Assembly (NCBI GenBank): GCA_964035545.1
Contig: OZ037765.1
Location: forward strand, 27,589,504-27,653,503
Origin: Bugula neritina
Taxonomy: Eukaryota; Animalia; Bryozoa
Reading direction: 5' to 3'
DNA: 64,000 nt
The notes beneath the pieces were generated by a model, which saw only the letters and a program-made list of their open reading frames with translations, searched no databases and was not told the origin of the DNA. The position numbers and the translations under genes were made by a program. Shown here one piece after another: positions 4,840 to 64,000 of the stretch. Position 1 is the stretch's first letter. The number at the start of each line of letters is the position of its first letter.

Positions 4840-7010
4840 AGTCAGTGAGCCAGCGACAGAGACGCCGACTGTCACTGGGATTACTGTGGTTACATTTTAA
4901 TAAGGATGAGAAAATTAACCTCTTCTGATTTTATAAATTCAAAATTACCAAAATTACTATTATAGTTATATTAGACTTAATATAACATTAAGTTTGACTA
5001 TAAATATAAGTTAAAGTATTATAACTTTTAGTTATAATAATTATAACTAATACTTTACTTTCCATTACAATCAATATTATGATTAATAAATTTTATTTCA
5101 ATTACCAAATCAATTATAATAATAATGTGACAAAAATTATAAAATTACAATATTACAAAAGAGTAAATCAGCAAACCTAAAAACAACCTAAAGAAATTCA
5201 AATAATTTAAATAATCAATTCAACTCCAATTATATTTATTTTTAAAATAACAATATGTACACATTCATTATTTAATTTAGGTATGACATTATGATTATGA
5301 TTATAAATGATTATAAGATTTAATATTAATTATATTTAATTTCATTATTTTATAAATATTATTAAATTTAATGTTCATAATGATATTCAATATTCATATT
5401 GATAATAATATTATTATCAATAAAATTGAATATAATATTTAAATTTGAATTAAATATTAATTTGAAAGCCAATTTAAATTGTGACAAATAAATATTCTAA
5501 ATCTAATCAGTAATTAAGTCAAAACTTTTCATGTTTTCAGTTTTTGTGCTGATTCAAAGACCATGACTTTGAGCCATCGATATGAGTATCACTATTACTG
5601 AGCTGGAATATTATGGAGTTCATTGATCACTATCACATGCATTTCCGCAATTGATGGGTTTTCAAGTTGTCACATCATGAATTCGTTGACTTGTCTATCG
5701 CTTGTAGCAACACCAATTTGGTGGTCAAGGACAATAAACTGGAAAAGACATAATATTATTATTTGTTGATTTAATTGTTTTATCAATGTATTTTTTAATT
5801 GATATTATTTTTATTTTAGCGGTTACTGACCCTGAATTAGAAATAATAATGTTTTCAGTTATTGGGCGCTGAACACAGTGCTTCGAAGATCTCAAGTTTA
5901 AAGTTAGGAGGGAAAGAGAGAGAGAGGAGTTCGACAACGTCTCTCTATAAGCTGTGCGCTTAGTCACTGCTTATTCGGTGCTGCTTCTAATAGTTCTAAA
6001 AAATCAATTTGTAACTTCAATAGAAGTTTTGAAAGTTAATACACAAATACGTGTATTTGCCTGAATAAAAAAAAAATTAAGATCTAGTAAAATTCTCTCA
6101 AGAAATATGGGAAAAGTTCTGCATTTCTAATAGACACTTTAACTCTGACTTGGCGATTGTATTTTTATTTTTTATCTAAACTTCCTGTAACCTTTGCATA
6201 TTCACAATTTACATTTAGTTTTACTAAAATATGATTATCATTATAGGCCACAGACCTTTATTCATTTATTCATATTAGTAGCAGTGAATATAAATAATGT
6301 TTTATAGAACAGCATGGTGAAAATTGCATCAATTCAAATCAGTTGAATCATTAACTTTCAATCACACTCACAGTCATTCTCAGTCTCACAGTCATTGTGG
6401 TTGTGATTGTCATTGTGAATCATTGTGATTGTGATACTGATTGACTATTGAGTATTGAGTGATTGAAATTGTGATTGTCAATCATCAATGGCTAACCAAA
6501 GTTAAAGTGAAAGTTTATTCAAAATAATTCAATTTCATACTGCTGATAAAAAAGTATTACTATTAGTATTACTAGTAGTAGTAGTATTACTATTACTCAG
6601 TATTACTATTAGTCATGCTCAGCCTCATCTCATGATCCATGGTGATGTTGATTCTGATAGTGATACTCATACTTATGCCTATGGTAATCTCAATCTGATA
6701 GTAGTACTACTAGTAGTACTGGTGGTACCGCAGGCGTAGTTGGTAGTTTCAACTAGTAATACTAATACTGAACTAAAAATAGAATTGGTGAATCACGTGC
6801 AATTGCATGATAATGCACTTGGTTATGGTAGAAGTTTAAAATTAATTAAACAGATTAAATAATAACATTTTATTAATTTTTAAATTTAGTTATTATTATT
6901 ATTAATATTATTGTTATTATCGGATTCGTAAGAACTAAAATGCATACTTCATAAAACGAAATTCTGACTCACTGACATCAGTATTACTATTAGATATCAA
7001 TTTCAATGAC
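4840..7010. promoter_or_regulatory. Divergent (head-to-head) promoter region between SIDT (-) and TP53RK (+), flanked by TAN/TGA-rich low-complexity tracts
   Basis: The two genes point away from this interval; a more GC-rich core at ~5640-5990 lies between degenerate ATT/AGT/TGA triplet tracts. Transcription start sites are not directly visible. Confidence 0.5.
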
Positions 7011-30511: not shown

Positions 30512-33174
30512 CTTTACCAACACAAGTGAATTGCATTCATAGAAAGCATTTGGAGAGCCCATCAAACTAGCAATGTTCCCAGAGCCTTCTACAAAATATG
30601 TTATAAAAGCTATTTTATTTTGATTTGAGTTTCAATATAAACATACAGGTAATAAAATTGTATTCAAATATATTTTATTGCAGTCAAGAGTGAAACTATT
30701 GTCAAATGCAGAAACCATTATTATATGAAAGAGATGAAGAAAAAATGTTTTGTTACTTAGAATATAAAATAAGTAACTGAAATATAAAGTCAAACTTAGC
30801 TTGTAACAAATTATAAAGTGAATATAAAATTAATAACACAATTCTATTCTATGTAAAAGTACTTAATGCAAATTATAAATGAAATGACAGTTTCCAAGTA
30901 ATTACATAACTTAATTTTGCTTACACATTAAGCATTCACTATATTTAAAGTACTATTCATGAATATATTGTAAGGTGCTATATTTCATGAACTAAGCTCA
31001 TGCATAATCTCACAGTTTATTTATTCACAGCCTCTAAATGATAGATATTTATTATATTTCATTTGAACTCTATGGTCAATGGCTAAAAACTCTGTAAGAC
31101 AGTTTTTCATCTAATTAAATCAGACAGAGGGGCAGGAAACTATTATTACTGCAATTATACACTTTCAATGGCTGAATGTCACATCTACTGGGTCACCACA
31201 GCATTTGCAATTATCATAATATCTGAGGTGCCACTTTGTTTGCACAGTATAAAGATAAGTGAAAGATAGTATATACTATATATAGCACGCTGATGATAAT
31301 AATAGACCACTAAAAATAGAAATGATTCCTAATGAAGGTTAGCATCTGCAGATAGTACGATTATATACAGTAGCATAAATTTCTTACAGATAGCAATAAA
31401 AAGAAAGAAGATAGAAGGAAAATCAGTTTTGAATTTGGACCATTATACTGTAGATAAACTTCAGTTTAAATACATAGAAATGTGAAGGTAGTGTTTAAAA
31501 ACTAAAATGTCAAAAAGATGATTCTTTGAATATATCAACACATTATCACAATACTAAATCAGGCAAAATTCCAAAAAGAACTTGAAACATTAAACAGCCA
31601 CAGTGCATTAAACATAATTGTTCTAATTTCATAATTGATAAAGAATTTAGAAGCAAAAAAATTTGAAATTGAAGACCATAGATTTACTAATTATCAACAT
31701 TACGATATAAATATTCTTTAGGTACTACCCTAAACAACATACTGGCTAAAGTACTTCATACTTTAATCACTTGAAAGTATTATAATTCATATTATTTTAA
31801 CGTAGAAGTTGAAACCTATTATGTTGTATCAATCACAGTATAAACAAAACTGAAATTTTCTAATAATATAAATGAATAACCAAACATGGGAAGCTATCAT
31901 TTTGTTCACCAATTAAATTTAATCTTCAACAGAACTAAAAAAACAGGTCCGTCAATAAATCCTACTCACACCAAAACAATTTGATTGAATTCGGATCAAA
32001 CTCTTGGCTTGCAACATTTTTACTTAAAATAAAAAGCACCCGGGTGAAAATTTCTTCACAAGAACTGATGTCAGTGTGCTCAGAGCCTATGATTGCTAGA
32101 ACCTGAGAAAATATCTCTATGAATCTCCATTAGGATTTTTACTTAATGATTTTAATAATTATAAAGCTCCACGCTTTGAAGAATATTTTCAATAGTGAAT
32201 GTTAGCAAGTGATTACCACCGTTTTTATTAGAAAACCCGGCAGTTTTTTATTTTAATAATTTCATCTCCACTGGTACCATGACTGATATCAATATTTAAT
32301 AATGATGTTTAGATACACATATAACCTAAGTCTCCAGTAATGAATTGTTACTAAATAATAGCTATTAATTCTAATTATTCACTCACCAATAAGTGATATA
32401 GAAAGCTCAACTTGCAATTATAGAACTAAAAATTTATAATCCCAGTATAAAACTTAGTCTAAACAATCTTATTTAAAATAGAATAAACTATATACAACCA
32501 TCAGTAGTAATTAGACTTGACATATTTTATTACTGAGTAAGTAATAAAATAAAGTCAAATAAAATTTAAAGATCAGTAAAATACTTTGTTTATGTAACAA
32601 TATATTATATTATATTAATTAATGTGACTACAAAATATGAATGTGTCAGCATGAGTATAGGTATGAGCATCCATAGGGTGTAAATGTATTGTATAATACT
32701 TACACTAACATTTACTACAACGCCTGAACTACAGGTATAACATTACCTGTGAGTAAAAGTAATACTAATACAGCAATAATAATCGAAGTTATTTTGTTTA
32801 TCTATTATGATTATCAGTTATGAGTAACATCAAACTAAAACTGAAAGTCAACTTGAAGCACTATTCACAATATCAGTCCCAGAGTGAGGGTGATTGTATG
32901 GTAAAAATCACAGTGTGAATGTCAATGTGAAACCTAATAAGGCATTGAAAATGAATATATCTCGAAACTGTAATACTAACATTAAAAGAGTTAAACTAAT
33001 GTTAATAGTAAATTAAATATTTAATTTATGCTAACTAAGTCCAAGTTACAGGTAACAGCAACAGGCAATAGTAATACTATCAGTATCATTATGACTATTA
33101 CTAACTAAAACTGTGCCAGTAGAAGTTAGTAAGTCAGCTACTGTTAATTTTAATATCAAATTCAATATTAATAT

Positions 33175-33625
33175 GGGTGCAGGTCATTTCATACACAAGT
33201 CGTTTCTTACCCACTTTTCTCGGTTGTTTTATACACATCAATATGAATTAACTACAATACATATTTTTTGATATCTATTTATTATTTGATGTACAAGTCA
33301 TACAGTACAGCTCACAAGTAACTTGCACATTTTATTTCGCAGCATGCTTATTTATTATTGAGATATAGAGATGTTATGGAGGTAACTGCTCTTTTGGTCT
33401 AGATATTATCAGTAGATGACAACACTTAGTCATTGAATATATAGCTTTTTTGTTTCTGGGATGCAATAAATAAGTAAACTGGCATCATTTAAAATGGTTA
33501 TCCAGTGGATCAATTTATTATTCATTTTGTGTACGGAATAGACAGCGGTTTGTGTACAAAACAACTAATTTGTATACGAAATGACAGGTGTACGAAATGA
33601 CTTGTGTACAAAATGACAGTAACCC
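33175..33625. mobile_element. MITE with degenerate TIRs and subterminal TACGAAATGAC repeats
   Basis: Left gggtgcaggtcatttcatacacaagtcgtttc versus right gaaatgacttgtgtacaaaatgacagtaaccc; flanks attaatat / atcaatgt (6 of 8). Confidence 0.75.
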
Positions 33626-33699
33626 ATCAATGTTATATGAATATAAATAAAAGCTTTTTAGTTCTTACGGCTCAGTTATACTCAATTTTTATCTTACTT

Positions 33700-35230
33700 T
33701 AACTCTTACAGTTACTGTTTTACAGCTACTCATAATGTTACAGACCGAGACTACAGCCCTTCAATAAAATGAAAATCAAATTGAAGTACAATTATTACTA
33801 TAAGTATAAATATAACATTAATATTACTGTTAAAGTTACAATTAGTATTATTATTACTATTAGTATAACTAATAGTCTATAAACACTATTATACTTAGTG
33901 AATTACTATTACTATTTTCATTTTGATTATCGTCATGACTTGGGGGCATTATCATTGTGATTATTTATCATTTAAAATTAATGATTAATATAAATATGAT
34001 TTATATAATTTAAATCAGCATTTCTATGATAACGATTTTTAGTATGATGATGATTATCATTATTATCACGATAATCAAATTAAAATTCAATGATCGACAA
34101 TACAATAGAAAAGGCTGAGACATAGTGATACTCATATTGATATTGATACTCATAGTCAAGTCACACCCATAGAGATAGTATTAGTATTACTATATTTACT
34201 ACGTCTATTAATATAATTATTATTAGTCATAGTCACTCATAGTCATAGTCGTACTCGTAGTGATACTGATAGTGATACTATTACTCATAAGGCTAAGCCA
34301 TAATTATAACCACAATGATAATATTTATATTCATATTACTTATCAGTATAACTATAACTTTATAAATTAAAATTATAAATATAACGATAAGTATTAGACT
34401 AAGAGTAAGTATTACTATTAGTATTACTAAAAGTAAAGTCTAAAACTAAAAGTAAAAGTGCAATATTATGATTAACTGTAAGTGTAACTCTGCAACACTA
34501 CCTGTAAGTATTTACTCAGTAATACTTACACTTACAGAGCTACAGTTAATTCACTGCATTACTATTAGTATAACTATAAGTATTACTATTACTATAGTAT
34601 CACTATTAGTATTACTAATAGTAATACTATTAGTATTAGTATTACTATAACTATAAGTATAACCATGTCTGTTGCCAATGCCATTGGTATTACTATTAGT
34701 ATTAGTATTATTATTACTATTAGTATTACCATTAGTATTAGTATTACTATAACTATTGCCTATTATAATTATCATTACTATTAGTATCACTATTACTATT
34801 ACAGTATTAGACATTAGACTTAGTGATTGGTCTGATCATTAGACTTAGAAATAGAGGCGCTTCTGATAGTGATTTGCCTTGGGTTACGCACGTAGTACTA
34901 CTAGTACTAGTACACTACTAGTAGTACTCACTAGTAGTAGTACTACTACTACTAGACTAGTAGTAGTAATACTATTAGAGTTAGACTAGTAGAACTAGCA
35001 ACTAGTACTACTACGTCTACTAGTAGCACTATAAGTATAACTATTAATATTACTATTACTATTAGTATTTGACAGCTGACCAGTGACTGTCGACTCGTTG
35101 AGAACTTTGAGTTACTGTTAGTGTTAGTGTTACTGTTAGTGTTGACTCTAATTTTTATTCATTTTCAACTTACAAGTGAATCGCTGTGACTGTCATTGTA
35201 ATTATCATGGTGCTCGAACTATAATTAACT
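33700..35230. repeat. TAG/CTA/ATT-rich low-complexity tract at the presumed DLG5/FAM167 divergent 5' region
   Basis: Degenerate (AGT)n, (ACT)n and (ATTAGT)n runs. Confidence 0.8.
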
Positions 35231-49900: not shown

Positions 49901-52409
49901 TCAGGTTGAACAGAGTTTACTCATTGCAACATTCTAATAATAAGTTATATGACCTGTTAGTTACATACAGTAAATATTTCATCTAGAAGAATAATTTAAC
50001 AAGACAACCAAAACTTCATAGTTAAACCACAATTCTAATGATGTTACTATAAAATAACAGTAATGTAAAATGATTTTTTGTCATTACGAATTTCAAGTGA
50101 ATAAAATTTTGTCACGCCTGCCCAACCTGCAACACTATAAAAATTCTAATTCACAAACTGAAGAAAGCAAATAGCCAACTGTTTTCCAAAACATTTTCCA
50201 AAAATTAGGAAAAAAGTAATAATACATGAAAACCACCAGCTTACCCGTTCTGATTTAATGGACTGCAGTTCTTTGAGAAGCTCTGCGACCTCCTCAGTGT
50301 CTGTTTTACTCTCCTGGACTGCCAATAGTCTGCTGTTCACTTCCTCCAGCTGAGTCTTGTGCGAGTCTACCACACTCGTCAAATGCTTGTTGTCCAGATT
50401 TGATTTGTCTAACAGTGACTCTAGTTCTCTGATCTGAAACATGCACATCTCTCAATCACATCAACACACCGCAGTGAATGAGTGCAACATTGCTAACTAC
50501 TACTACTGCATATAGTGCTTCTAAACCAAATCACAAGAAATATCATGTAGAAGTTGAAAGAACTTGGGCTATGAGAGTTGGTTTTATGCAAGCTAATATT
50601 TAATTACAGGAAGTTGAGCCTGTACTAGTCTTATTATAGTCATGCAATGTTGAATGCTGGTGTGTTTGCCTCAGCTGCAACATTTACTCAATTGTTGGAG
50701 TAAATAAACAAAAACAATACCTACGTTTTTGCATTGTGAAATGGTCATTGTGCTGCACTACTTTAATTTTGTAAGAATCGGGCATCTTAGTTTGTGTATG
50801 TTTGAAATAAAACCCAAGATGGAAAGATAAGATAGCAGTGACCTTACAGAACAGGTTACAATAGCATTCACACATACTACAATGTTGAGATGAGCCCCCA
50901 GCGCACACAGTGAAATGACCCTAATTTAGGATAACTCAAGCACCGATAACTCACGCAGGTTTATAGTCGCTATCCCTGTGAGAAACCCCTGATAGAACGG
51001 GTTTTTGTTAAAGCGGGCTAAGGACTTATTTAAATGAGGCACAGGAGCAATTATGACTGGATGCTCTTCCTAACATCACCAACGGCCTTTGTCCGGCTCG
51101 AACCCATGACCTTCTGTTTACTAGGCAAACACTCTAACCCCTAGACTACACCTCAAGCACCCATTCTTCATCAAATTAGCTTACTCTGTATCTCAGCTCA
51201 CTAATCAGCTGTGATTGATCTCTCAGCTCATTTAAAACTTTCATTTCATCTCGTTGGCTGCCTAAATGCTTCTTCAGAGTTTCAATCTCATCTTGATATT
51301 CCATTTCCATTCTCTCTTTGTGCTCCAACCTTTGAGTTACTGAATAGTTTTCTTCCTTTAATATCTGCCAGAATCAAACCAGACTATAATTATGTGAAAC
51401 TGGATATATTCTTATGAAAAGATTACTATTTATAAAACAACAATAAGATTTGTAAGATTAGTTTCTCTTCCACTCTAAAACATTGACATTTTCTCAATGT
51501 CTGGAGTCAATTATTAGAGATTCACATAAATTATATGATGCTTAGAGAAACCATGCCATAGGGTTACTACATGTTATGCTAGCAGCACGAGGAATGCAAG
51601 TGCTGTCAAAGTCATGTCACTTGATTTCTCCTCAACTACCAATCATAGTAATTGTCTATGCAATGTAATTGTCTATCTCAACTGTCTATGCAATTAGAGA
51701 GTGGAAAAAGTATTATGCAAAAAACTTCGTGTAGCCACATAGAGATTAAAGCAGAATAATAATGGTTCCATTTCTTCATAAACCTATAGCTTTACAGCCT
51801 AGTAACTAGACACTCCTTTACGATTTCTATATGCACTACACTCTACAGTGAAGAGTAAATTTCTCTTCAGCTGTCACAAAATTATATGCATGAAGGTTTC
51901 TGTTGACAAAAACATGACAGAATTTAAAATTAATGACACTTACGAAGTGCAGGTTAAACATTAACCAGCTGAGCTGCATACACTTGATATATTCAAATAT
52001 ATTCAAAATACCAACAGTAGAGGCTAAACTATTTGTGTCTAATGAGGAATTAGATATAAGTGCCCCTTTATGAAATGTAGTCTAAATTACTTATTACTCA
52101 GCATTGACAATAGCACACATACAATCTAGAACCTGCAAGCACAATACTACATGTGCATAACATGTTATATGTATATTAATAGTTTTCTTTCAGATGAAAA
52201 TTCAATATGACTTATCTGACCACCTCAAGCTGTCGGGTGAATTTTCTAGTCATGTCATCAATGCTTTGTGCCAACTCTCGATTCTGGTCAAGCAAGTCTT
52301 TACCATACTGAGCAGATGTGCGCAAGATTTGATCCTTTTCCTCTAAACGTGCTCTCAGAGATTCAACGTCACACAATGAAGAGGATGAGGAGCTACATGA
52401 GCTAGCCAT
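40933..52409 (-). CDS. SPDL1: Spindly, kinetochore dynein-dynactin adaptor; 13 exons, about 625 aa
   Basis: Exons 52409-~52221, 51364-51185, 50433-50245, 48968-48819, 48333-48235, 47560-47450, 46305-46174, 45441-45344, 45182-45001, 44693-44473, 44000-43779, 42376-42338, 40998-40933; all phase-consistent. CC1 box (SAQYGKDLL), Spindly motif KGNSMFTELDDKR followed by VKYESL..KLQM, and C-terminal CaaX CPTQ* (human Spindly ends CPQQ). Confidence 0.92.
45616..45669. repeat. 12-bp CA-rich repeat (CACGCACACAGA-type)
   Basis: Directly visible next to the MITE. Confidence 0.8.
45677..46131. mobile_element. MITE with ~55-bp well-preserved TIRs in Spindly intron 7
   Basis: gtgtagggccacacgacacgttttacaacgagcgtgacgtgcgagaaatcccatt ... 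aatgggatttctcgcacgtcacgctcgcgtaaaacgcgtcgtgtggccctacac; CpG-rich relative to the host sequence; no transposase ORF. Confidence 0.88.
47364..47416. repeat. 21-bp tandem repeat, 2.5 copies, Spindly intron
   Basis: ACATCATACATAAACTGGTCG repeated. Confidence 0.85.
48590..48806. repeat. Degenerate ~29-bp tandem repeat (AGTTAAACTGTAGACTATCAGTGACT), Spindly intron
   Basis: Several imperfect units next to the exon 4 donor. Confidence 0.7.
50945..51151 (-). mobile_element. tRNA-derived SINE with a MetaSINE/MESC-like core and a 10-bp TSD
   Basis: The minus strand begins gtgtagtctaggggttagagtg (A box-like), then GGTTCGAGCC (B box), then core gttggtgatgttaggaagagcatccagtcataa. Perfect TSD ctcaagcacc at 50935-50944 and 51152-51161. 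The core-family assignment is from memory. Confidence 0.85.
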
Positions 52410-53049
52410 GACTGCCACTGTGTAAAACAAATATAACAATAAAGTGAGAAAAGTAAAACTACCTAATACCTGTACTAATTGCTCCCATAATGCTGCAACT
52501 TGAAGTATGTAAATTTGAGTGAAAAATAACTATATCACATGAAAGCACTTGTTCTAAGCCATGATGTTACATCGTACTTTTCCTTAGTGACACATTGATG
52601 ACATATTTAAAATATATGTTAAAAATCAGTGAGAACCATTGACAGTAATTCAAAATTTAGATAGAAGCTATGAAACTTTTGCATAATTGTATGGTACCTT
52701 ACTTAAGTTAGAATCTTGTTTTTGGTTAACAAAAACTATACATAAAAGATGCTGCCAGAAAACTATTAGAATTTCAAATTAACTTTGTAAAATAATGACC
52801 GAAGCAAATTTACGGAACGAGTCTAACAGGTTTGTTATGATTATTCAACTTTTAGGCATGCTGCAATGTATTGCAATAACTGCTTTCTCATTTCATAAGT
52901 TCGTAGATCTGCCTTGCTGCTGAATTGTTAGCTCCAACTTTTTCACATATGTCTAAATCACGAGGTTAAATTTTCCAGTCATTCATTAACTTATTTCAAT
53001 TATCTACGATAATGTTAATGATAAAGCAAAAGTCATATGCTAATAAAAT

Positions 53050-53910
53050 ACCCCCCTAATAATTATGATTATCATTATGGTTATAACTACTAGTACTACT
53101 GCTCTAGGCTACTACTAGTAGTAGTAGTACATACTAAGCATTAATATTTATACTAATACTAATACTATAGTAACAGTAAAAGACTAATAGTAATAGTTAT
53201 ACTTATAGTAATACTAAGAGTAAGTCTAATATCAATACTATAGTAAACTATAAAACTAAATGTAACACTAATAGTAATAATAATTAAATGTGATAGTAGT
53301 AGCTATACTTATTTTTATAGTATAATTATAACATTAACTATAAGTAGGCTATGTAGTACTAGTAGTACTAGTAGTAGTAGTAGTAGCACTTTAGTGGTAC
53401 CTGTACTACTAGTACTGCTAGAACTACTAGTAGTAGTAGTAGTACTACTAGCAGTAGACGTAGTACAGTAATGAGTAAGTGCATCATCACATTCACTCGC
53501 AATAAGACCTAACAGTAACTGTAAGAGTAGGTGTAACATAAACTGCCACTACTAGTGCTACTCCTACTTCAAGTAGCACTACTAGTACTATTACTGTATT
53601 AGTAATAGTACGTCTATACCTAGATACTAGTAGTAGTAGTACTAGTAGTAGTAGTAGTACTCTACTTACAGTTACTATTAGTATTAGTATTACTATTACT
53701 ATTAGTATTACTATTACTATTAGTTATTGCTATTAGTTATTACTATTACTGTTGTCTATTAGCATTGGCAATACTAATAGTAATACTATTGTCATTGATG
53801 TTACTATTAATATTATTATTAGTAATATTTTTGTATTAACTATTACTATTACTATTAGTATTACAGTACTAGTAGTAGTACTAGATTGCAGTTACTGTTA
53901 CTTTTATTGC
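53050..53910. repeat. (AGT)n/(ACT)n/(ATT)n low-complexity tract upstream of Spindly
   Basis: Directly visible degenerate trinucleotide runs. Confidence 0.85.
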
Positions 53911-54569
53911 TAAGCCTAATGATACGATAGAAAAAACGATCCATTGTAGCCCTAATCCCAATGTATAATAATTAGTATTTCTAATAATTGTATTTGTAAC
54001 TATAACCAGAGGGAGAGTGGTTTACTTCAACTCCGAGTTTTAAATTCCATGAAATGACTTAAACCCGCCCCAAATTAAAAATGAACAGTAACATAAGGAT
54101 ATGATAAAATCGTTGTATTCGACGGTTTCCCTGAAAAGACAACTCTTAATATATGTTCTAGCGTGAAGATTTTACCTTCACAATACTGAAAAGTAAGAGA
54201 TTAATTTATACAAGAGAAATGACATTATATTGAGATGAAAGTTCTCAGCAAATGTAATGCTGACTTGCAACGACTATTTTTATGAAAACTACCAGTTTTT
54301 ATCTTACAACTTTGCTTGATTATTGATAGCGAACAAGGGAACAGGGCTTGATTTTTTCAAAAATGCAATTTGGCATTTGGTTTATTATACTTGCATACTT
54401 GGATTTTGACTAATCATAACTTAATATTATAAAGTGTATAAGAATTGTCAATCTTTTAAATAATTACACTCCTGGCACAACCAGTAAAACAGAAAATAAA
54501 CTTGCTATATAAATATATTTACACCACCAACAGTTGATGTAGTAAAATAAATTTATTTTCACAACACTA

Positions 54570-55505
54570 CTATCTGCCAAAACTCATATTATCATTATTT
54601 GGTAAGGTAGTAAGTAAATTTCTCACTCTGCACAAAATAATTTCATTTGAACTAGAACAGTTTTCAGGAAAATATGGAGGTTCAATTGTAACAGTTCCAT
54701 TAGCTATAGTGAGAGTGTCTGCTGATTTAGTGACAGGTATTCTATTAGCACCAAACCACCGACATACTGCATCTCTTCGTTCAGCTATTTGGGATGCACT
54801 CAAATCAATCTACAATAAGAACAGAAATTCACATATAAAATTTTTTTTTCAAAAATTGGTATAACTTGGCTCAATTTACTATATTATACATTTACATTTT
54901 GATAAAAATTCAATACAGCTTTTGATAACAAAATTTAGGGCATACACTCAACATTATATGTACCTCATGTGTTTTCCCATATTGCGATATTATATCTAGA
55001 ACCCAACTAGGACATTCCTCGTCAAAGACATTTACATCAGTAACCGAGGTATTATTTACAATAACCACATTCATTTTATGTGTATCTTCATCATTTGAAC
55101 AGGAAAACAATACCCAGCTGTGAGTCACTGGGTCAATAGTGTAAACATATCCTTCATAACTAACACCTTCACTTGTTGAAAGAATGACCTACAATAACCA
55201 CATTAGCAGTGAAACCATGCATGCAAAAAGAAAAACACATTACAAAAACATCATCATACCAAGGAAATTAGCAAATTATTTAAATGGTGCAGCACAAAAT
55301 GGTTCAACTCCTAATTCAGAATTGAATAAAAACAAAAGTAAATATTCAGAAAATAATTCAGTTGTATGTTACCATACATCTTCCACAAGACAAACCAACT
55401 CACTCTTTTATTTACATAGTTCCACAGTTTATGTGGATCTGTCTTAAAAACTGGGTGCAAATCTTTCTCTTCTTGTGCAACGTTTATACCATATGTAGAT
55501 GTCAT
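54570..55505 (-). CDS. GEMIN6: Gem-associated protein 6 (SMN complex, Sm-like fold); 3 exons, 188 aa
   Basis: Exons 55505-55404, 55188-54964, 54809-54570 (GT-AG, phase 0/0). DPHKLWNYVNKRV..YEGYVYTIDPVTHSWVL and TIEPPYFPENCSSSNEIILCRVRNLL match Gemin6 (human ..TIDPPYGPENCSSSNEIILSRVQDLI, recalled). AATAAA (-) at 54557-54552. Confidence 0.93.
55407..55412 (-). terminator. Candidate MED9 poly(A) signal AATAAA embedded in GEMIN6 exon 1 (Asn-Lys codons)
   Basis: The minus strand reads GTA AAT AAA AGA|GTGAGTTGGTTTGTCTTGTGG, about 100 nt after the MED9 stop, followed by GU/U-rich sequence. Confidence 0.5.
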
Positions 55506-55509
55506 ATTT

Positions 55510-56464
55510 CTAGCTGTTAAATGTGCAGAGTTTTCTGTATTTGACTAACAAATCTGATTTTAGAGCAATCTGCTTCTTTGTATAAGTTTCAAGTTTCTGT
55601 TGTTCCTCTGGACACAAAGATATTCCTGGATATGAATTAACTTGAGATTTAGCTTGATCCAACTGGTGCTTGAAGTCTTTAATTTTTTGAGTAATATCCT
55701 GACCTTCTTCAATTCTACAACATATGGCTATAGTGATGATAAAATATTTAATACAATGTAGTTTTTTATTTACAAATGATGATACGATATAAGTATATAC
55801 ATAACTATAGAGCATATTCAAATTTGCCCAAGATTAAAAAAATGAACAAGGTCAAATGAAAACATTCACACACCATATACACTTGCTATTATTTTACTAT
55901 TTGCTATTATAATTTTAATAAATGTATGATAATCATTATCATTATGGTATTAATAATCAGTATGGGTATCATAATAATGATAATTTACATAATATTTATC
56001 CTATTCATAATGATAATGATAATAATAATCTAAAAGTAAATCATAAAGTGATAATCACATTAATCATTATGATTATTGACATTAAGTTTAAGTTTATGAT
56101 AATCATAATGACTTTAAGTTTAAGTTTATGTTAATGATATTGATAATCATAATGACTTGTTTAATGAAGTGATAATCGTTATCTCTTAGTGTTAGTGCTA
56201 TTCATGATCATAAAATCACATTCACATGATTCAGTTTCACAGACCATGAGCCTGAGCCCTGAGGCATGATGATGATGATGATGATGATAATCATAATCTG
56301 AAGAGTGAAAATCAAATTGACTAAAATTTCAATTTAATAATTTAGAACTTGTTGTATATACAAATTAAACAACAAACAACACAAAATTAATAGACTAAAA
56401 GCACGCACCCTTTTAATATGTTATAAACTTTGGGAAGGAACTGGAAAACTTCAGAGTCGGCCAT
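55510..56464 (-). CDS. MED9: Mediator of RNA polymerase II transcription subunit 9; 2 exons, 86 aa
   Basis: Exon 1 56464-56409 (MADSEVFQFLPKVYNILK, GG|GTGCGT, phase 2) and exon 2 55714-55510 (IEEGQDITQKIKDFKHQLDQAKSQVNSYPGISLCPEEQQKLETYTKKQIALKSDLLVKYRKLCTFNS*). FLP, PGIxxxPEEQ and KxxLLxKY motifs of Med9. Confidence 0.9.
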
Positions 56465-56478
56465 TACTGGAATTGTTC

Positions 56479-56636
56479 TATAAGCAGCTCCGAGTTGGGG
56501 GTGAAGGACGATTTTGGTGTAGGGCTCTCACGCTGAACTGAAACTATAGTCATAGTTCAATGGGCTCTCACGCATAAGTTGGAGACTTAAATCAATACTG
56601 AAATCGTTTTTCACCCCCAACTCGGAGCTGCTTATA
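56479..56636. mobile_element. 158-bp palindromic MITE-like element 14 nt upstream of the MED9 ATG
   Basis: Perfect 27-bp inverted repeat tataagcagctccgagttgggggtgaa / ttcacccccaactcggagctgcttata, extendable with mismatches; TA at both ends; internal direct repeat gggctctcacgc twice. Confidence 0.75.
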
Positions 56637-57372
56637 AACTATTTTTAAATCAATGCGTTAATTCAAGCAGAGTTATCTTCTTAGCCAAAAAAGATAACTC
56701 GAAAAATGAAGTTTAAGAAATTGTTGAAAACGTTTTTGAAACTACACTGCGCCCCAATTCTTCGGCATTTGTAACTTTCTAGCATTTTGTTGAGATTACA
56801 GAATAGCTGAGCCTAGCAACTTATATTGAAAATGCAAAGCTCTACAAATAAAATCACAAATATGGCTTAAATATGGGAAGGATGTACTTGATGCATTTTA
56901 TCAATTTCTCATGACAGTTGAGGCATATTGATATATTTTTAACAGGTGCAGCTAGATAACAGAGCAAAACATAACACCAGTTCAGACATAAAAAGATTAG
57001 TTAGGCTTGCCACAGTTTGCTAAATAGAACTTAGTACAGCTTTGATTACTACTTTATCAATTATAATAAGCTGCAAGGTGCTGATTTCAATAAGCATCAC
57101 ATTAAAAAAAACATACTTTTACAGTTGATGCTTTTATTTGATGATACATTACAACTAGACAAATAGCAGTCTAAAGAATTTTTATGAACAGATGCCATTA
57201 TAAGCTGAATAAAAAGTGATTAAATTTCAATAGTACACCATGAACAATCAGCAAAATGTCATTTCTAATTATAGCTAAGAAAACCTGTCAGTAGTTTCCT
57301 AGATCCACAAAAACTGTCTGGAACATTTACACAATTAAATGCTTGCTAATAAATAGTCAAAAAATAACATTT

Positions 57373-63537: not shown

Positions 63538-63679
63538 ATTTTAAACGGACCAAAGAAAGGCCAGAGTCATCAGGCTCTGGCTGTTACTGTAAAACTAAAT
63601 CAAAATGTGAGACTGGGTACAATTTTAACTCAAAAGTAGAAACTGAAGAAATAGCAAGACTAAGGTCAAGGGAATAGAT

Positions 63680-64000
63680 AATAGTAATAGGCTACTAACA
63701 TTATCATTACTACTATAAATTAATAGCAATGGCCTAATGGTTATTAGTAATGACTATAAGTATAACTATAAGTATAAGTATTAGGACAACTAATACTATA
63801 AGTATAATTTATTAATTATAACTATAACCTATTAACTACATGTATAACTATAAGTATAAGTATAATTTGAAGTAGAAGTAACTTGTAATACTAATAGTAA
63901 TACCAAGTCTACTAGTACTAACAAGTAATACTAATAGCTAATAACTATAACTATAAGTATAACTACTAGTACTAGACACTAGTACTACTACCAGTAACTG
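63680..64000. repeat. TAA/TAG/CTA low-complexity tract upstream of the first visible zinc-finger exon
   Basis: Directly visible degenerate ACTATA/AGTATA/ACTAGT units. Confidence 0.8.

What the first reader, a model, noticed from the sequence alone, without database searches (positions are those of the whole stretch)
54570..56464. MED9 and GEMIN6 form one transcription unit: stop and start codons are 4 nt apart
Seen: on the minus strand the intact MED9 ORF ends ...TTT AAC AGC TAG (55512-55510), followed by AAAT and then the ATG (55505) of an intact three-exon GEMIN6 in a different frame. There is no room for a MED9 3' UTR or an intergenic GEMIN6 promoter. Known: MED9 (Mediator middle module) and GEMIN6 (SMN complex, snRNP assembly) are unrelated proteins. 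Short upstream ORFs with adjacent stop and start codons allow reinitiation or leaky scanning in animal dicistronic mRNAs. Inference: this is a dicistronic or operon-like unit co-expressing a transcription factor subunit and a spliceosome-assembly factor. The 86-codon MED9 has no internal in-frame Met and could behave as a conserved-protein uORF controlling GEMIN6.
Basis: partly seen in the sequence, partly recalled or inferred. Interest (0 to 1): 0.9.

Follow-up and report, generated by a model that had tools for sequence, protein, structure and literature searches.

The report
MED9 last exon leads GEMIN6
In the moss animal Bugula neritina the genes for MED9 and GEMIN6 share one exon with only 4 bases between stop and start. 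One assembled RNA carries a leader from another chromosome in place of MED9's first exon, so GEMIN6 becomes the first readable protein on that message.

Summary
On the minus strand, a two-exon, 86-codon MED9 ends at TAG 55512-55510. Four bases later, at 55505, a three-exon GEMIN6 starts in the same exon.

This is not an assembly fault. The same junction occurs in independent B. neritina contigs. A 5-base version occurs in an unnamed relative whose synonymous sites are saturated against B. neritina. A 6-base version occurs in Watersipora subatra.

One public RNA-seq contig (L004) carries MED9 exon 2, the junction and spliced GEMIN6 on one RNA. Its 5' end is not MED9 exon 1. It is a 27-base leader joined exactly at the MED9 exon-2 acceptor.

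That leader is absent from the window. It matches the end of a ~71-base leader exon found in about 13 small RNA-type genes on another chromosome. This looks like spliced-leader trans-splicing.

On this RNA, MED9 exon 2 is an AUG-free 5' UTR and GEMIN6 is the first ORF, so reinitiation is not needed.

The weak points are that there is only one RNA contig and that raw reads could not be obtained.

The parts
56409..56464 (-). MED9 exon 1 (ATG 56464-56462, 18 codons + 2 nt; donor GT at 56408-56407)
   Evidence: A homologous exon (DIFQFLPKIHNILK) is present in Watersipora subatra.
55715..56408 (-). MED9 intron 1. It holds a six-base-periodic tract at 55861-56370. Its 3' AG (55716-55715) is the acceptor to which the foreign leader is joined in RNA contig L004.
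   Evidence: the leader ends exactly where exon 2 begins; periodicity scan.
55404..55714 (-). Shared exon: MED9 coding 55714-55513, stop TAG 55512-55510, spacer AAAT 55509-55506, GEMIN6 ATG 55505-55503 and GEMIN6 coding to 55404. There is no ATG in any frame from 55714 to 55506.
   Evidence: The stretch is contiguous in RNA contig L004 nt 28-340.
54964..55188 (-). GEMIN6 exon 2 (Sm-like domain)
   Evidence: PF06372, E=7e-4, below the cut-off on this exon alone. It is spliced as predicted in L004.
54570..54809 (-). GEMIN6 exon 3 (Gemin6_C; stop TAG 54572-54570). AATAAA follows at 54557-54552.
54621..54627 (-). Cryptic donor inside GEMIN6 exon 3 (the exon part ends at 54627, followed by GTGAGA). 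In L004 it is spliced to the Spindly acceptor.
53011..53940 (-). Six-base-periodic A[C/G]T-type tract between GEMIN6 and Spindly (likely the Spindly promoter-proximal region or outron)
52224..52419 (-). Spindly (SPDL1) first coding exon: acceptor AG 52419-52418, exon from 52417, ATG 52409-52407

Best explanation
MED9 and GEMIN6 form one overlapping two-gene unit that has been kept in cheilostome bryozoans.

The last coding exon of MED9 runs, after the stop and 4 bases, straight into the first coding part of GEMIN6. GEMIN6-coding RNA is made by joining a spliced leader to the 3' splice site of MED9 intron 1. The leader is about 71 nt and is donated by a roughly 210-nt small RNA from a multi-copy gene family on another chromosome.

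This removes MED9 exon 1 and its start codon. The remaining MED9 exon 2 contains no AUG, so it acts as a 209-nt 5' UTR and the first AUG is GEMIN6's. MED9 protein is made only from RNAs in which exon 1 is cis-spliced to that same acceptor.

Shown here: the layout, its conservation, one RNA contig with leader, MED9 exon 2 and spliced GEMIN6, and the leader gene family.

Inferred: that this isoform is the main source of GEMIN6; that the choice is a competition between cis- and trans-splicing on one precursor, rather than a second promoter in the intron; and that AUG depletion is selected for this reason.
For: 1. RNA contig L004 (Logan SRR4125604). Nt 1-27 are foreign. Nt 28 onward are MED9 exon 2, TAG-AAAT-ATG, and GEMIN6 exons spliced at the predicted sites.

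2. The 27-mer is absent from the 64-kb window, which reaches 8.3 kb upstream, and from same-haplotype DNA contigs, even allowing 5 edits.

3. The 27-mer is a variant of the 3' end of a leader exon found in about 13 discrete units of ~290 bp on G000:C8 11.85-13.14 Mb. Each unit has a conserved upstream box, a ~71-nt exon, a GT donor, and then ~140 nt that are 96-98% conserved, ending at an A/T run.

4. The predicted fold pairs the leader's 3' half with the downstream part and places the donor in the stem. Five pairs show compensatory changes.

5. Four dispersed genomic copies start exactly at the leader's first base and lack the upstream box. After the leader's last base they run into different LINE-like mRNA bodies. 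This is what retrocopies of leader-bearing mRNAs would look like.

6. ATG counts between the exon-2 start and the GEMIN6 ATG are 0, 0 and 1 in three species. Codon shuffles expect about 2 per species. GEMIN6 coding sequence carries 1.8-3.6 ATG per 100 nt. Only about 2% of 209-nt windows in local coding DNA are ATG-free. Three Met positions of human MED9 are non-Met in the three bryozoan sequences.

7. The unit has a single six-base-periodic tract, in MED9 intron 1 just upstream of the acceptor used. The neighbouring genes each have such a tract ahead of their first coding exon, that is, at their 5' end.

8. I did not verify this.
Against: There is only one assembled RNA contig, and it comes from a 2-3% diverged haplotype or sibling type. 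I obtained no raw reads, so I have no junction counts, no transcript starts and no poly(A) sites.

The exact 27-mer variant is not in this assembly.

The candidate SL RNA has no canonical Sm site and no Rfam match.

Trans-splicing to an acceptor that has an upstream cis donor is unusual. It could be low-level noise that the assembler happened to keep.

The AUG depletion is only modestly significant under the conservative codon-shuffle null (P = 0.08, 0.07 and 0.26). It is also predicted by the leaky-scanning rival.

The same contig also carries an aberrant read-through splice into Spindly, so it need not represent the typical GEMIN6 mRNA.
Confidence: 0.55

Rival explanations
1. True dicistronic mRNA. 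Exon 1, exon 2 and GEMIN6 are on one mature mRNA. Ribosomes that skip the MED9 AUG (leaky scanning), or that terminate at the stop 4-6 nt upstream (reinitiation), translate GEMIN6. It could coexist with the leader isoform.
For: AUG depletion of the whole MED9 mRNA up to the GEMIN6 ATG. A conserved stop-start distance of 4-6 nt. No conserved poly(A) signal between the ORFs: the AATAAA at the end of GEMIN6 exon 1 is absent in W. subatra. The W. subatra MED9 AUG has C at -3.
Against: No RNA with exon 1 joined to exon 2 was seen. No 86-aa MED9 product was found among products of 37-117 aa in the protein collection that holds Logan contigs. The B. neritina MED9 AUG has G at -3 and G at +4, which is not a weak context. 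From general knowledge, reinitiation after an 86-codon ORF is normally inefficient. The leader isoform already provides a simple route to GEMIN6.
Confidence: 0.2
2. Classical SL-resolved operon without intercistronic DNA (Ciona or C. elegans SL1 type). The leader is trans-spliced at the AG lying in or just after the MED9 stop (CTAG|AAAT-ATG). MED9 mRNA is cleaved and polyadenylated there.
For: An AG lies 2-5 nt before the GEMIN6 ATG in all three species: CTAG in B. neritina, ATAG in the relative, and CTAG inside the spacer of W. subatra, whose stop is TAA. The species appears to use a spliced leader. Ciona operons have this form (PMC1488885). This idea was also raised in note s1-487255.
Against: L004 runs uninterrupted through this AG from MED9 exon 2 and carries its leader 209 nt upstream. 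No AATAAA lies at a suitable distance upstream of the stop in B. neritina or W. subatra. An AG in a 4-6 nt spacer next to a stop codon is not improbable by chance. This model does not explain the AUG depletion of MED9 exon 2.
Confidence: 0.12
3. GEMIN6 has an ordinary promoter of its own inside MED9 intron 1 or exon 2 and needs no leader. The leader on L004 is rare splicing noise or a library artefact.
For: A single contig is thin evidence. The periodic tract in intron 1 might mark a promoter (s1-481163).
Against: Both sides of the L004 junction fall on genuine splice sites: the donor of about 13 leader genes and the acceptor of MED9 intron 1. There is no shared 31-mer that could cause a false join. 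Leader-bearing retrocopies show that the leader does reach mRNAs.
Confidence: 0.1

Closest known systems
SL-resolved operons lacking intercistronic DNA (Ciona intestinalis; C. elegans SL1-type operons), PMC1488885
   Same: Two unrelated same-strand genes with essentially no DNA between them, in an organism that adds a spliced leader. One precursor molecule can yield either the upstream or the downstream mRNA, but not both.
   Different: Here the leader was seen at the upstream gene's internal acceptor, not at the gene boundary. The upstream gene's last coding exon is therefore kept as the downstream gene's 5' UTR. No cleavage or poly(A) site was seen at the boundary. In Ciona, one downstream gene (operon 42) had a single EST with the SL on an internal exon, its own exon 2, and that was treated as an exception.
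Dicistronic mRNAs read by leaky scanning (Drosophila dicistronic genes, PMC4528330; green-algal polycistronic mRNAs, PMC7896298; Drosophila stoned/Snapin with an AUG-free first cistron, recalled from memory and not checked)
   Same: Two unrelated conserved ORFs in tandem, a tiny spacer, and an upstream ORF depleted of AUGs.
   Different: An isoform lacking the upstream start codon exists here and makes scanning past it unnecessary. The upstream AUG context in B. neritina is not weak.
Known metazoan SL RNAs (nematode SL1/SL2, flatworm, Hydra, rotifer, tunicate, chaetognath)
   Same: A multi-copy small gene with an upstream promoter box, a leader exon followed by a GU donor, a donor held in a stem formed with downstream sequence, and the leader found on unrelated mRNAs.
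   Different: The leader is about 71 nt, whereas known leaders are roughly 16-50 nt (from memory). The RNA is about 210 nt. I saw no canonical Sm site and found no Rfam match. I found no published report of SL trans-splicing in Bryozoa in the library.
Loci that give two unrelated proteins by alternative 5' exon use (for example the cholinergic locus cha-1/unc-17; from memory)
   Same: One transcription unit yields one of two unrelated proteins according to which 5' exon is joined to a common acceptor.
   Different: Here one of the two alternative 5' exons appears to be a trans-spliced leader, and the shared exon is coding for one product and UTR for the other.

Membership tests
MED9 (Pfam PF07544) and GEMIN6 (PF06372 + PF20417) | Significant match to the family profiles, with intact ORFs | tested here: met
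   Med9 scores 40 bits (cut-off 26.9); Gemin6_C scores 68.9 bits (cut-off 33.4); the Sm-like domain scores 20.1 bits on exon 2 alone (cut-off 23.9); alignment to human and mouse MED9 chains. NCBI names KAF6033027.1 GEMIN6.
SL-resolved operon | The organism performs spliced-leader trans-splicing | tested here: met
   One RNA contig carries a leader not encoded within 8.3 kb upstream. A leader gene family lies on another chromosome. Leader-bearing retrocopies exist. This rests on one RNA contig plus genomic inference.
SL-resolved operon | Same-strand genes separated by a very short intercistronic distance | tested here: met
   4 nt in B. neritina, 5 nt in the relative, 6 nt in W. subatra.
SL-resolved operon | The downstream mRNA 5' end is formed by trans-splicing at an acceptor between the two cistrons | tested here: not met
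   In L004 the leader is joined 209 nt upstream, at the MED9 exon-2 acceptor, and the RNA runs through the boundary AG. A single contig cannot exclude use of the boundary AG in other molecules.
SL-resolved operon | A polycistronic precursor spans both complete cistrons, and the upstream mRNA has its own 3' end | not testable with these tools
L004 spans MED9 exon 2 to GEMIN6 and runs on into Spindly, but it lacks MED9 exon 1.
Leaky-scanning dicistronic mRNA | The upstream ORF is free of AUGs in all frames | tested here: met
   0 ATG in 265 nt in B. neritina. 0 in 210 nt in the relative. 1 in about 210 nt in W. subatra, opening a 25-codon uORF that ends about 60 nt before the GEMIN6 ATG.
Leaky-scanning dicistronic mRNA | A weak initiation context at the upstream AUG, and both ORFs on one mature mRNA | tested here: inconclusive
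   The context is G at -3 and G at +4 in B. neritina, and C at -3 in W. subatra. No exon-1-containing RNA was available.
SL RNA gene | A multi-copy small gene: promoter element, leader exon, GU donor and a conserved structured 3' part | tested here: met
   About 13 units. Conservation is confined to about 290 bp. The part after the donor is 96-98% conserved. Five compensatory pairs were found.
SL RNA gene | An Sm-binding site (RAU3-6GR) in a single-stranded stretch of the 3' part | tested here: not met
   No such motif is present in the consensus. No Rfam family matched at E up to 10.
SL RNA gene | The leader is found on many unrelated mRNAs | tested here: inconclusive
   It was seen on one RNA contig and on four genomic retrocopies with at least three different LINE-like bodies. 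Attempts to fetch other RNA contigs returned only DNA-type contigs.

The most novel reading that the evidence does not exclude
Cheilostome bryozoans use spliced-leader trans-splicing with an unusually long (~71 nt) leader. At the MED9/GEMIN6 locus they use competition between cis-splicing of a tiny first exon and trans-splicing of the leader at one shared acceptor. This decides which of two unrelated proteins a single promoter produces: a Mediator subunit or an snRNP-assembly factor. The arrangement is held across a split between cheilostome families deep enough that synonymous sites are saturated, with the shared exon kept nearly free of AUGs.
Probability: 0.3. Interest if true: 0.8.

Novelty: new variant of a known kind. 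Interest (0 to 1): 0.65.

Why it matters
If it holds, this locus gives a clean, conserved example of how an animal can express two unrelated proteins from overlapping genes without dicistronic translation. Swapping the first exon for a trans-spliced leader turns the upstream gene's last coding exon into the downstream gene's 5' UTR.

It also adds sequence-level support for spliced-leader trans-splicing in Bryozoa, in the form of candidate SL RNA genes and leader-bearing retrocopies. I found no report of this for the phylum in the searchable literature.

It explains why the published B. neritina annotation fuses the two proteins (KAF6028202.1).

GEMIN6 helps assemble the Sm core. In known SL systems the SL RNP itself needs that core, so coupling GEMIN6 output to leader supply is a testable idea.

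Tried and rejected

Exons were searched one by one by reference. Exons were joined only inside local scripts, to count ATGs and check frames.

3. I tried to find the leader on other transcripts. Spindly N-terminus searches gave only NCBI records. The HSP70 long-exon search gave Logan contigs that proved to be DNA-type runs. That HSP70 gene has a classical heat-shock/TATA promoter with its own 5' UTR.

4. The leader pattern was not found in JGI metagenome contigs. Rfam found nothing in the window or in a leader gene.

5. I asked whether the leader units are the 'promoter + first exon cassettes' of TRIM genes from note s1-445862. B-box exons on C8 lie at 5.4-10.3 Mb, not among the leader units at 11.85-13.14 Mb. 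The two are probably different things, but I did not settle this.

6. I looked for the profilin-COA4 'shared exon' pair (s1-466988) as a second example. None of the three profilin loci I examined, of the six matches, showed it.

7. Contig L040 of another relative keeps GEMIN6-Spindly synteny but does not reach MED9.

8. My recollection that a fly Gemin is encoded on a bicistronic mRNA was wrong. PMC6385987 does not say so.

9. No TURBS-like motif (UGGGA) was evident by eye upstream of the stop. I did not pursue this.

Full report
THE OBSERVATION

On the minus strand, MED9 is encoded by two exons: 56464-56409 and 55714-55510. The split codon restores the frame and gives an 86-residue protein that ends ...CTFNS-TAG. 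Four bases later (AAAT), at 55505, a three-part GEMIN6 ORF begins: 55505-55404, 55188-54964 and 54809-54570. An AATAAA lies 13 nt after its stop.

Pfam confirms both identities. Med9 gives E=4e-10 on exon 2. Gemin6_C gives E=3e-19 on exon 3. The Sm-like domain is just under its cut-off when exon 2 is scored alone. Human and mouse MED9 from Mediator structures align right to the end of exon 2, so MED9 is complete at its C-terminus.

The organism is Bugula neritina. NCBI holds GEMIN6 KAF6033027.1 (188 aa) and also a 276-aa model, KAF6028202.1. That model fuses MED9 to GEMIN6 by slipping frame across the stop.

NOT AN ARTEFACT, AND CONSERVED

The same TAG-AAAT-ATG junction is present in three genomic-type Logan contigs and one RNA contig from a B. 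neritina lineage that is 2-12% diverged.

ENA metagenome contigs from an unnamed relative keep the layout with TAG, 5 nt, ATG. Its MED9 exon 2 is 80% identical in protein but only 67% in DNA, and dS could not be estimated (saturated).

In the annotated genome of Watersipora subatra, a different cheilostome family, MED9 exon 1, a 2.2-kb intron, MED9 exon 2, stop TAA, 6 nt, the GEMIN6 ATG and then Spindly all lie on one strand. A further relative also keeps GEMIN6 followed by Spindly.

The near-abutment of stop and start is therefore an old, maintained feature.

RNA EVIDENCE

The only RNA evidence is therefore one assembled contig reached through the protein collection: L004, from Logan run SRR4125604.

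L004 aligns to the window as follows:
- 55716-55402: MED9 exon 2, the stop, the spacer and the first GEMIN6 coding part, all contiguous;
- 55188-54964 and 54811-54627: the next two GEMIN6 exons, confirming the predicted GEMIN6 introns;
- 52420-52224 and onward: it jumps from a cryptic GT inside GEMIN6 exon 3 to the acceptor in front of the Spindly start codon and continues through Spindly exons.

So transcription does run across the MED9/GEMIN6 boundary, and at least sometimes on into Spindly.

The important part is the 5' end. Nt 1-27 of L004 are not MED9 exon 1. They are a foreign sequence joined exactly at the first base of exon 2.

THE LEADER

The 27-mer is absent from the whole window and from same-haplotype DNA contigs, even allowing five edits. 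The exact variant is also absent from the assembly.

Its 3' half led to a family of about 17 genomic copies. About 13 of them lie scattered over G000:C8 11.85-13.14 Mb as discrete units of about 290 bp. Each unit has:
- a conserved CACACCGTTT box about 60 nt upstream;
- an exon of about 71 nt, with a short variable stretch where the L004 variant also differs;
- a GTAAAT donor;
- about 140 nt that are the best conserved part (96-98%), ending sharply at an A/T run.

The predicted RNA pairs the leader's 3' half with the downstream region and puts the donor inside the stem. Two more hairpins follow, and five pairs show compensatory changes.

Four other copies, on three different contigs (C1, C5, C9), lack the upstream box and start exactly at the leader's first base. 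After its last base they continue into LINE-like bodies with different junctions, 8 to 24 nt before their start codons where an ORF could be read. That is what retrocopies of leader-bearing mRNAs should look like.

Taken together, this is the anatomy of a spliced-leader RNA gene family. Two features are missing: I saw no canonical Sm site, and there is no Rfam match.

The 27 nt retained in L004 is also about what a k=31 assembler would keep of a sequence shared by many transcripts. That Logan uses k=31 is my own knowledge, not a tool result.

I found no paper reporting SL trans-splicing in Bryozoa. An earlier agent of this scan proposed it from raw reads on two other genes (s1-481163). I could not check whether its leader is the same one.

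WHAT THIS MEANS FOR THE LOCUS

On the leader-bearing RNA the MED9 start codon is gone. Neither the leader nor MED9 exon 2 plus the spacer contains an ATG, so the first AUG is GEMIN6's.

The absence of ATG in any frame holds for 265 nt in B. neritina and 210 nt in the unnamed relative. W. subatra has one out-of-frame ATG, whose 25-codon ORF ends about 60 nt before the GEMIN6 start.

By contrast, GEMIN6 coding sequence has 1.8-3.6 ATG per 100 nt. Only about 2% of 209-nt windows in local coding DNA are ATG-free. Codon shuffles that already keep the Met-free composition give P = 0.08, 0.07 and 0.26. The signal is therefore suggestive rather than decisive. Three Met positions of human MED9 are non-Met in the three bryozoan sequences.

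The depletion fits a role of exon 2 as a 5' UTR. It would equally fit leaky scanning on an exon-1-containing dicistronic RNA. No exon-1-to-exon-2 RNA could be examined.

PROMOTERS

Six-base-periodic tracts occur once per transcription unit in this region. One lies upstream of the zinc-finger gene (63571 to the window end). One lies in MED9 intron 1 (55861-56370). One lies upstream of Spindly (53011-53940). None lies between the zinc-finger stop (57373) and the MED9 ATG.

Note s1-481163 links such tracts to the stretch just behind promoters that is replaced by the leader. On that unverified reading, MED9 and GEMIN6 share one promoter-proximal region. MED9 exon 1 would then be a small donor-bearing exon inside what is otherwise an outron. 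If the donor is used the RNA encodes MED9; if the leader wins, it encodes GEMIN6. A second promoter at the start of the intron would give the same RNAs. I cannot tell these two apart.

RIVALS

A classical operon, with trans-splicing at the AG in or next to the stop, remains possible. An AG sits 2-5 nt before the GEMIN6 ATG in all three species. However, L004 runs through that AG, no suitable poly(A) signal precedes it, and this model leaves the ATG depletion unexplained.

The AATAAA in the last codons of the first GEMIN6 coding part (note s1-487384) is present in the unnamed relative but not in W. subatra, and L004 splices past it.

Ciona operons without intercistronic DNA (PMC1488885) are the nearest described system. 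They differ in where the leader lands.

VERDICT

'One transcription unit' is supported. 'MED9 acting as a uORF with reinitiation' is unnecessary and untested.

The best-supported mechanism is exon-1/leader exchange at a shared acceptor (confidence 0.55).

This is a new variant of known kinds (SL trans-splicing, overlapping or dicistronic loci) in a phylum where none has been published. The main evidence, one contig, is thin, and a read-level test is straightforward.

Noticed in passing
G000:C8 11.85-13.14 Mb (loci L025-L031, L034, L036, L037, L039, L067, L070): About 13 dispersed units of ~290 bp: a CACACCGTTT box, a ~71-nt leader exon, a GT donor, and ~140 nt of highly conserved, structured sequence. 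They are candidate spliced-leader RNA genes. They have no Rfam match and no canonical Sm site.
   Followed up: partly
L032 (G000:C5), L033 and L038 (C1), L035 (C9): LINE-like elements (PHD-finger ORF1) whose genomic copies begin with the complete leader, joined 8-24 nt before the ORF where one could be read, and lack the leader gene's promoter. They look like retrocopies of trans-spliced element mRNAs.
   Followed up: partly
window 54627 -> 52417 (minus strand): RNA contig L004 splices a cryptic GT donor inside GEMIN6 exon 3 to the acceptor 8 nt before the Spindly ATG. This gives a read-through GEMIN6(truncated)-Spindly RNA and shows that this acceptor works and that transcription passes the GEMIN6 poly(A) signal.
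   Followed up: partly
window 4921-5490, 6331-6930, 32731-35220, 53011-53940, 55861-56370, 63571-64000: Six-base-periodic tracts rich in ACT/AGT or ATN triplets. The three in the part I annotated each lie at the 5' side of a transcription unit. No such tract is seen in the syntenic 10 kb of Watersipora subatra.
   Followed up: partly
window 56475-56640 (minus strand, just upstream of the MED9 ATG): An inverted repeat of about 165 bp with ~30-nt terminal arms (…AGCAGCTCCGAGTTGGGGGTGAA… / …TTCACCCCCAACTCGGAGCTGCT…). It looks like a MITE and ends 10 nt before the CAG that precedes the MED9 ATG.
   Followed up: no
NCBI KAF6028202.1 (P0152): The published B. neritina proteome contains a 276-aa MED9-GEMIN6 fusion made by a frame slip across the MED9 stop (…KYR|NSVHLTARN|MTSTYG…). 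It is most likely an annotation artefact of this tight junction. UniRef names it MED9.
   Followed up: yes
L073:490-510 (Watersipora subatra): The W. subatra MED9 start is preceded by a 4-codon uORF whose TGA overlaps the MED9 ATG (…ACTGATGG…).
   Followed up: no
L047 (G000:C1:21314637-21319370): A tandem of HSP70 genes with heat-shock elements, a TATA box, a tiny first coding exon and one ~600-codon exon. They appear conventionally transcribed, with their own 5' UTR.
   Followed up: no
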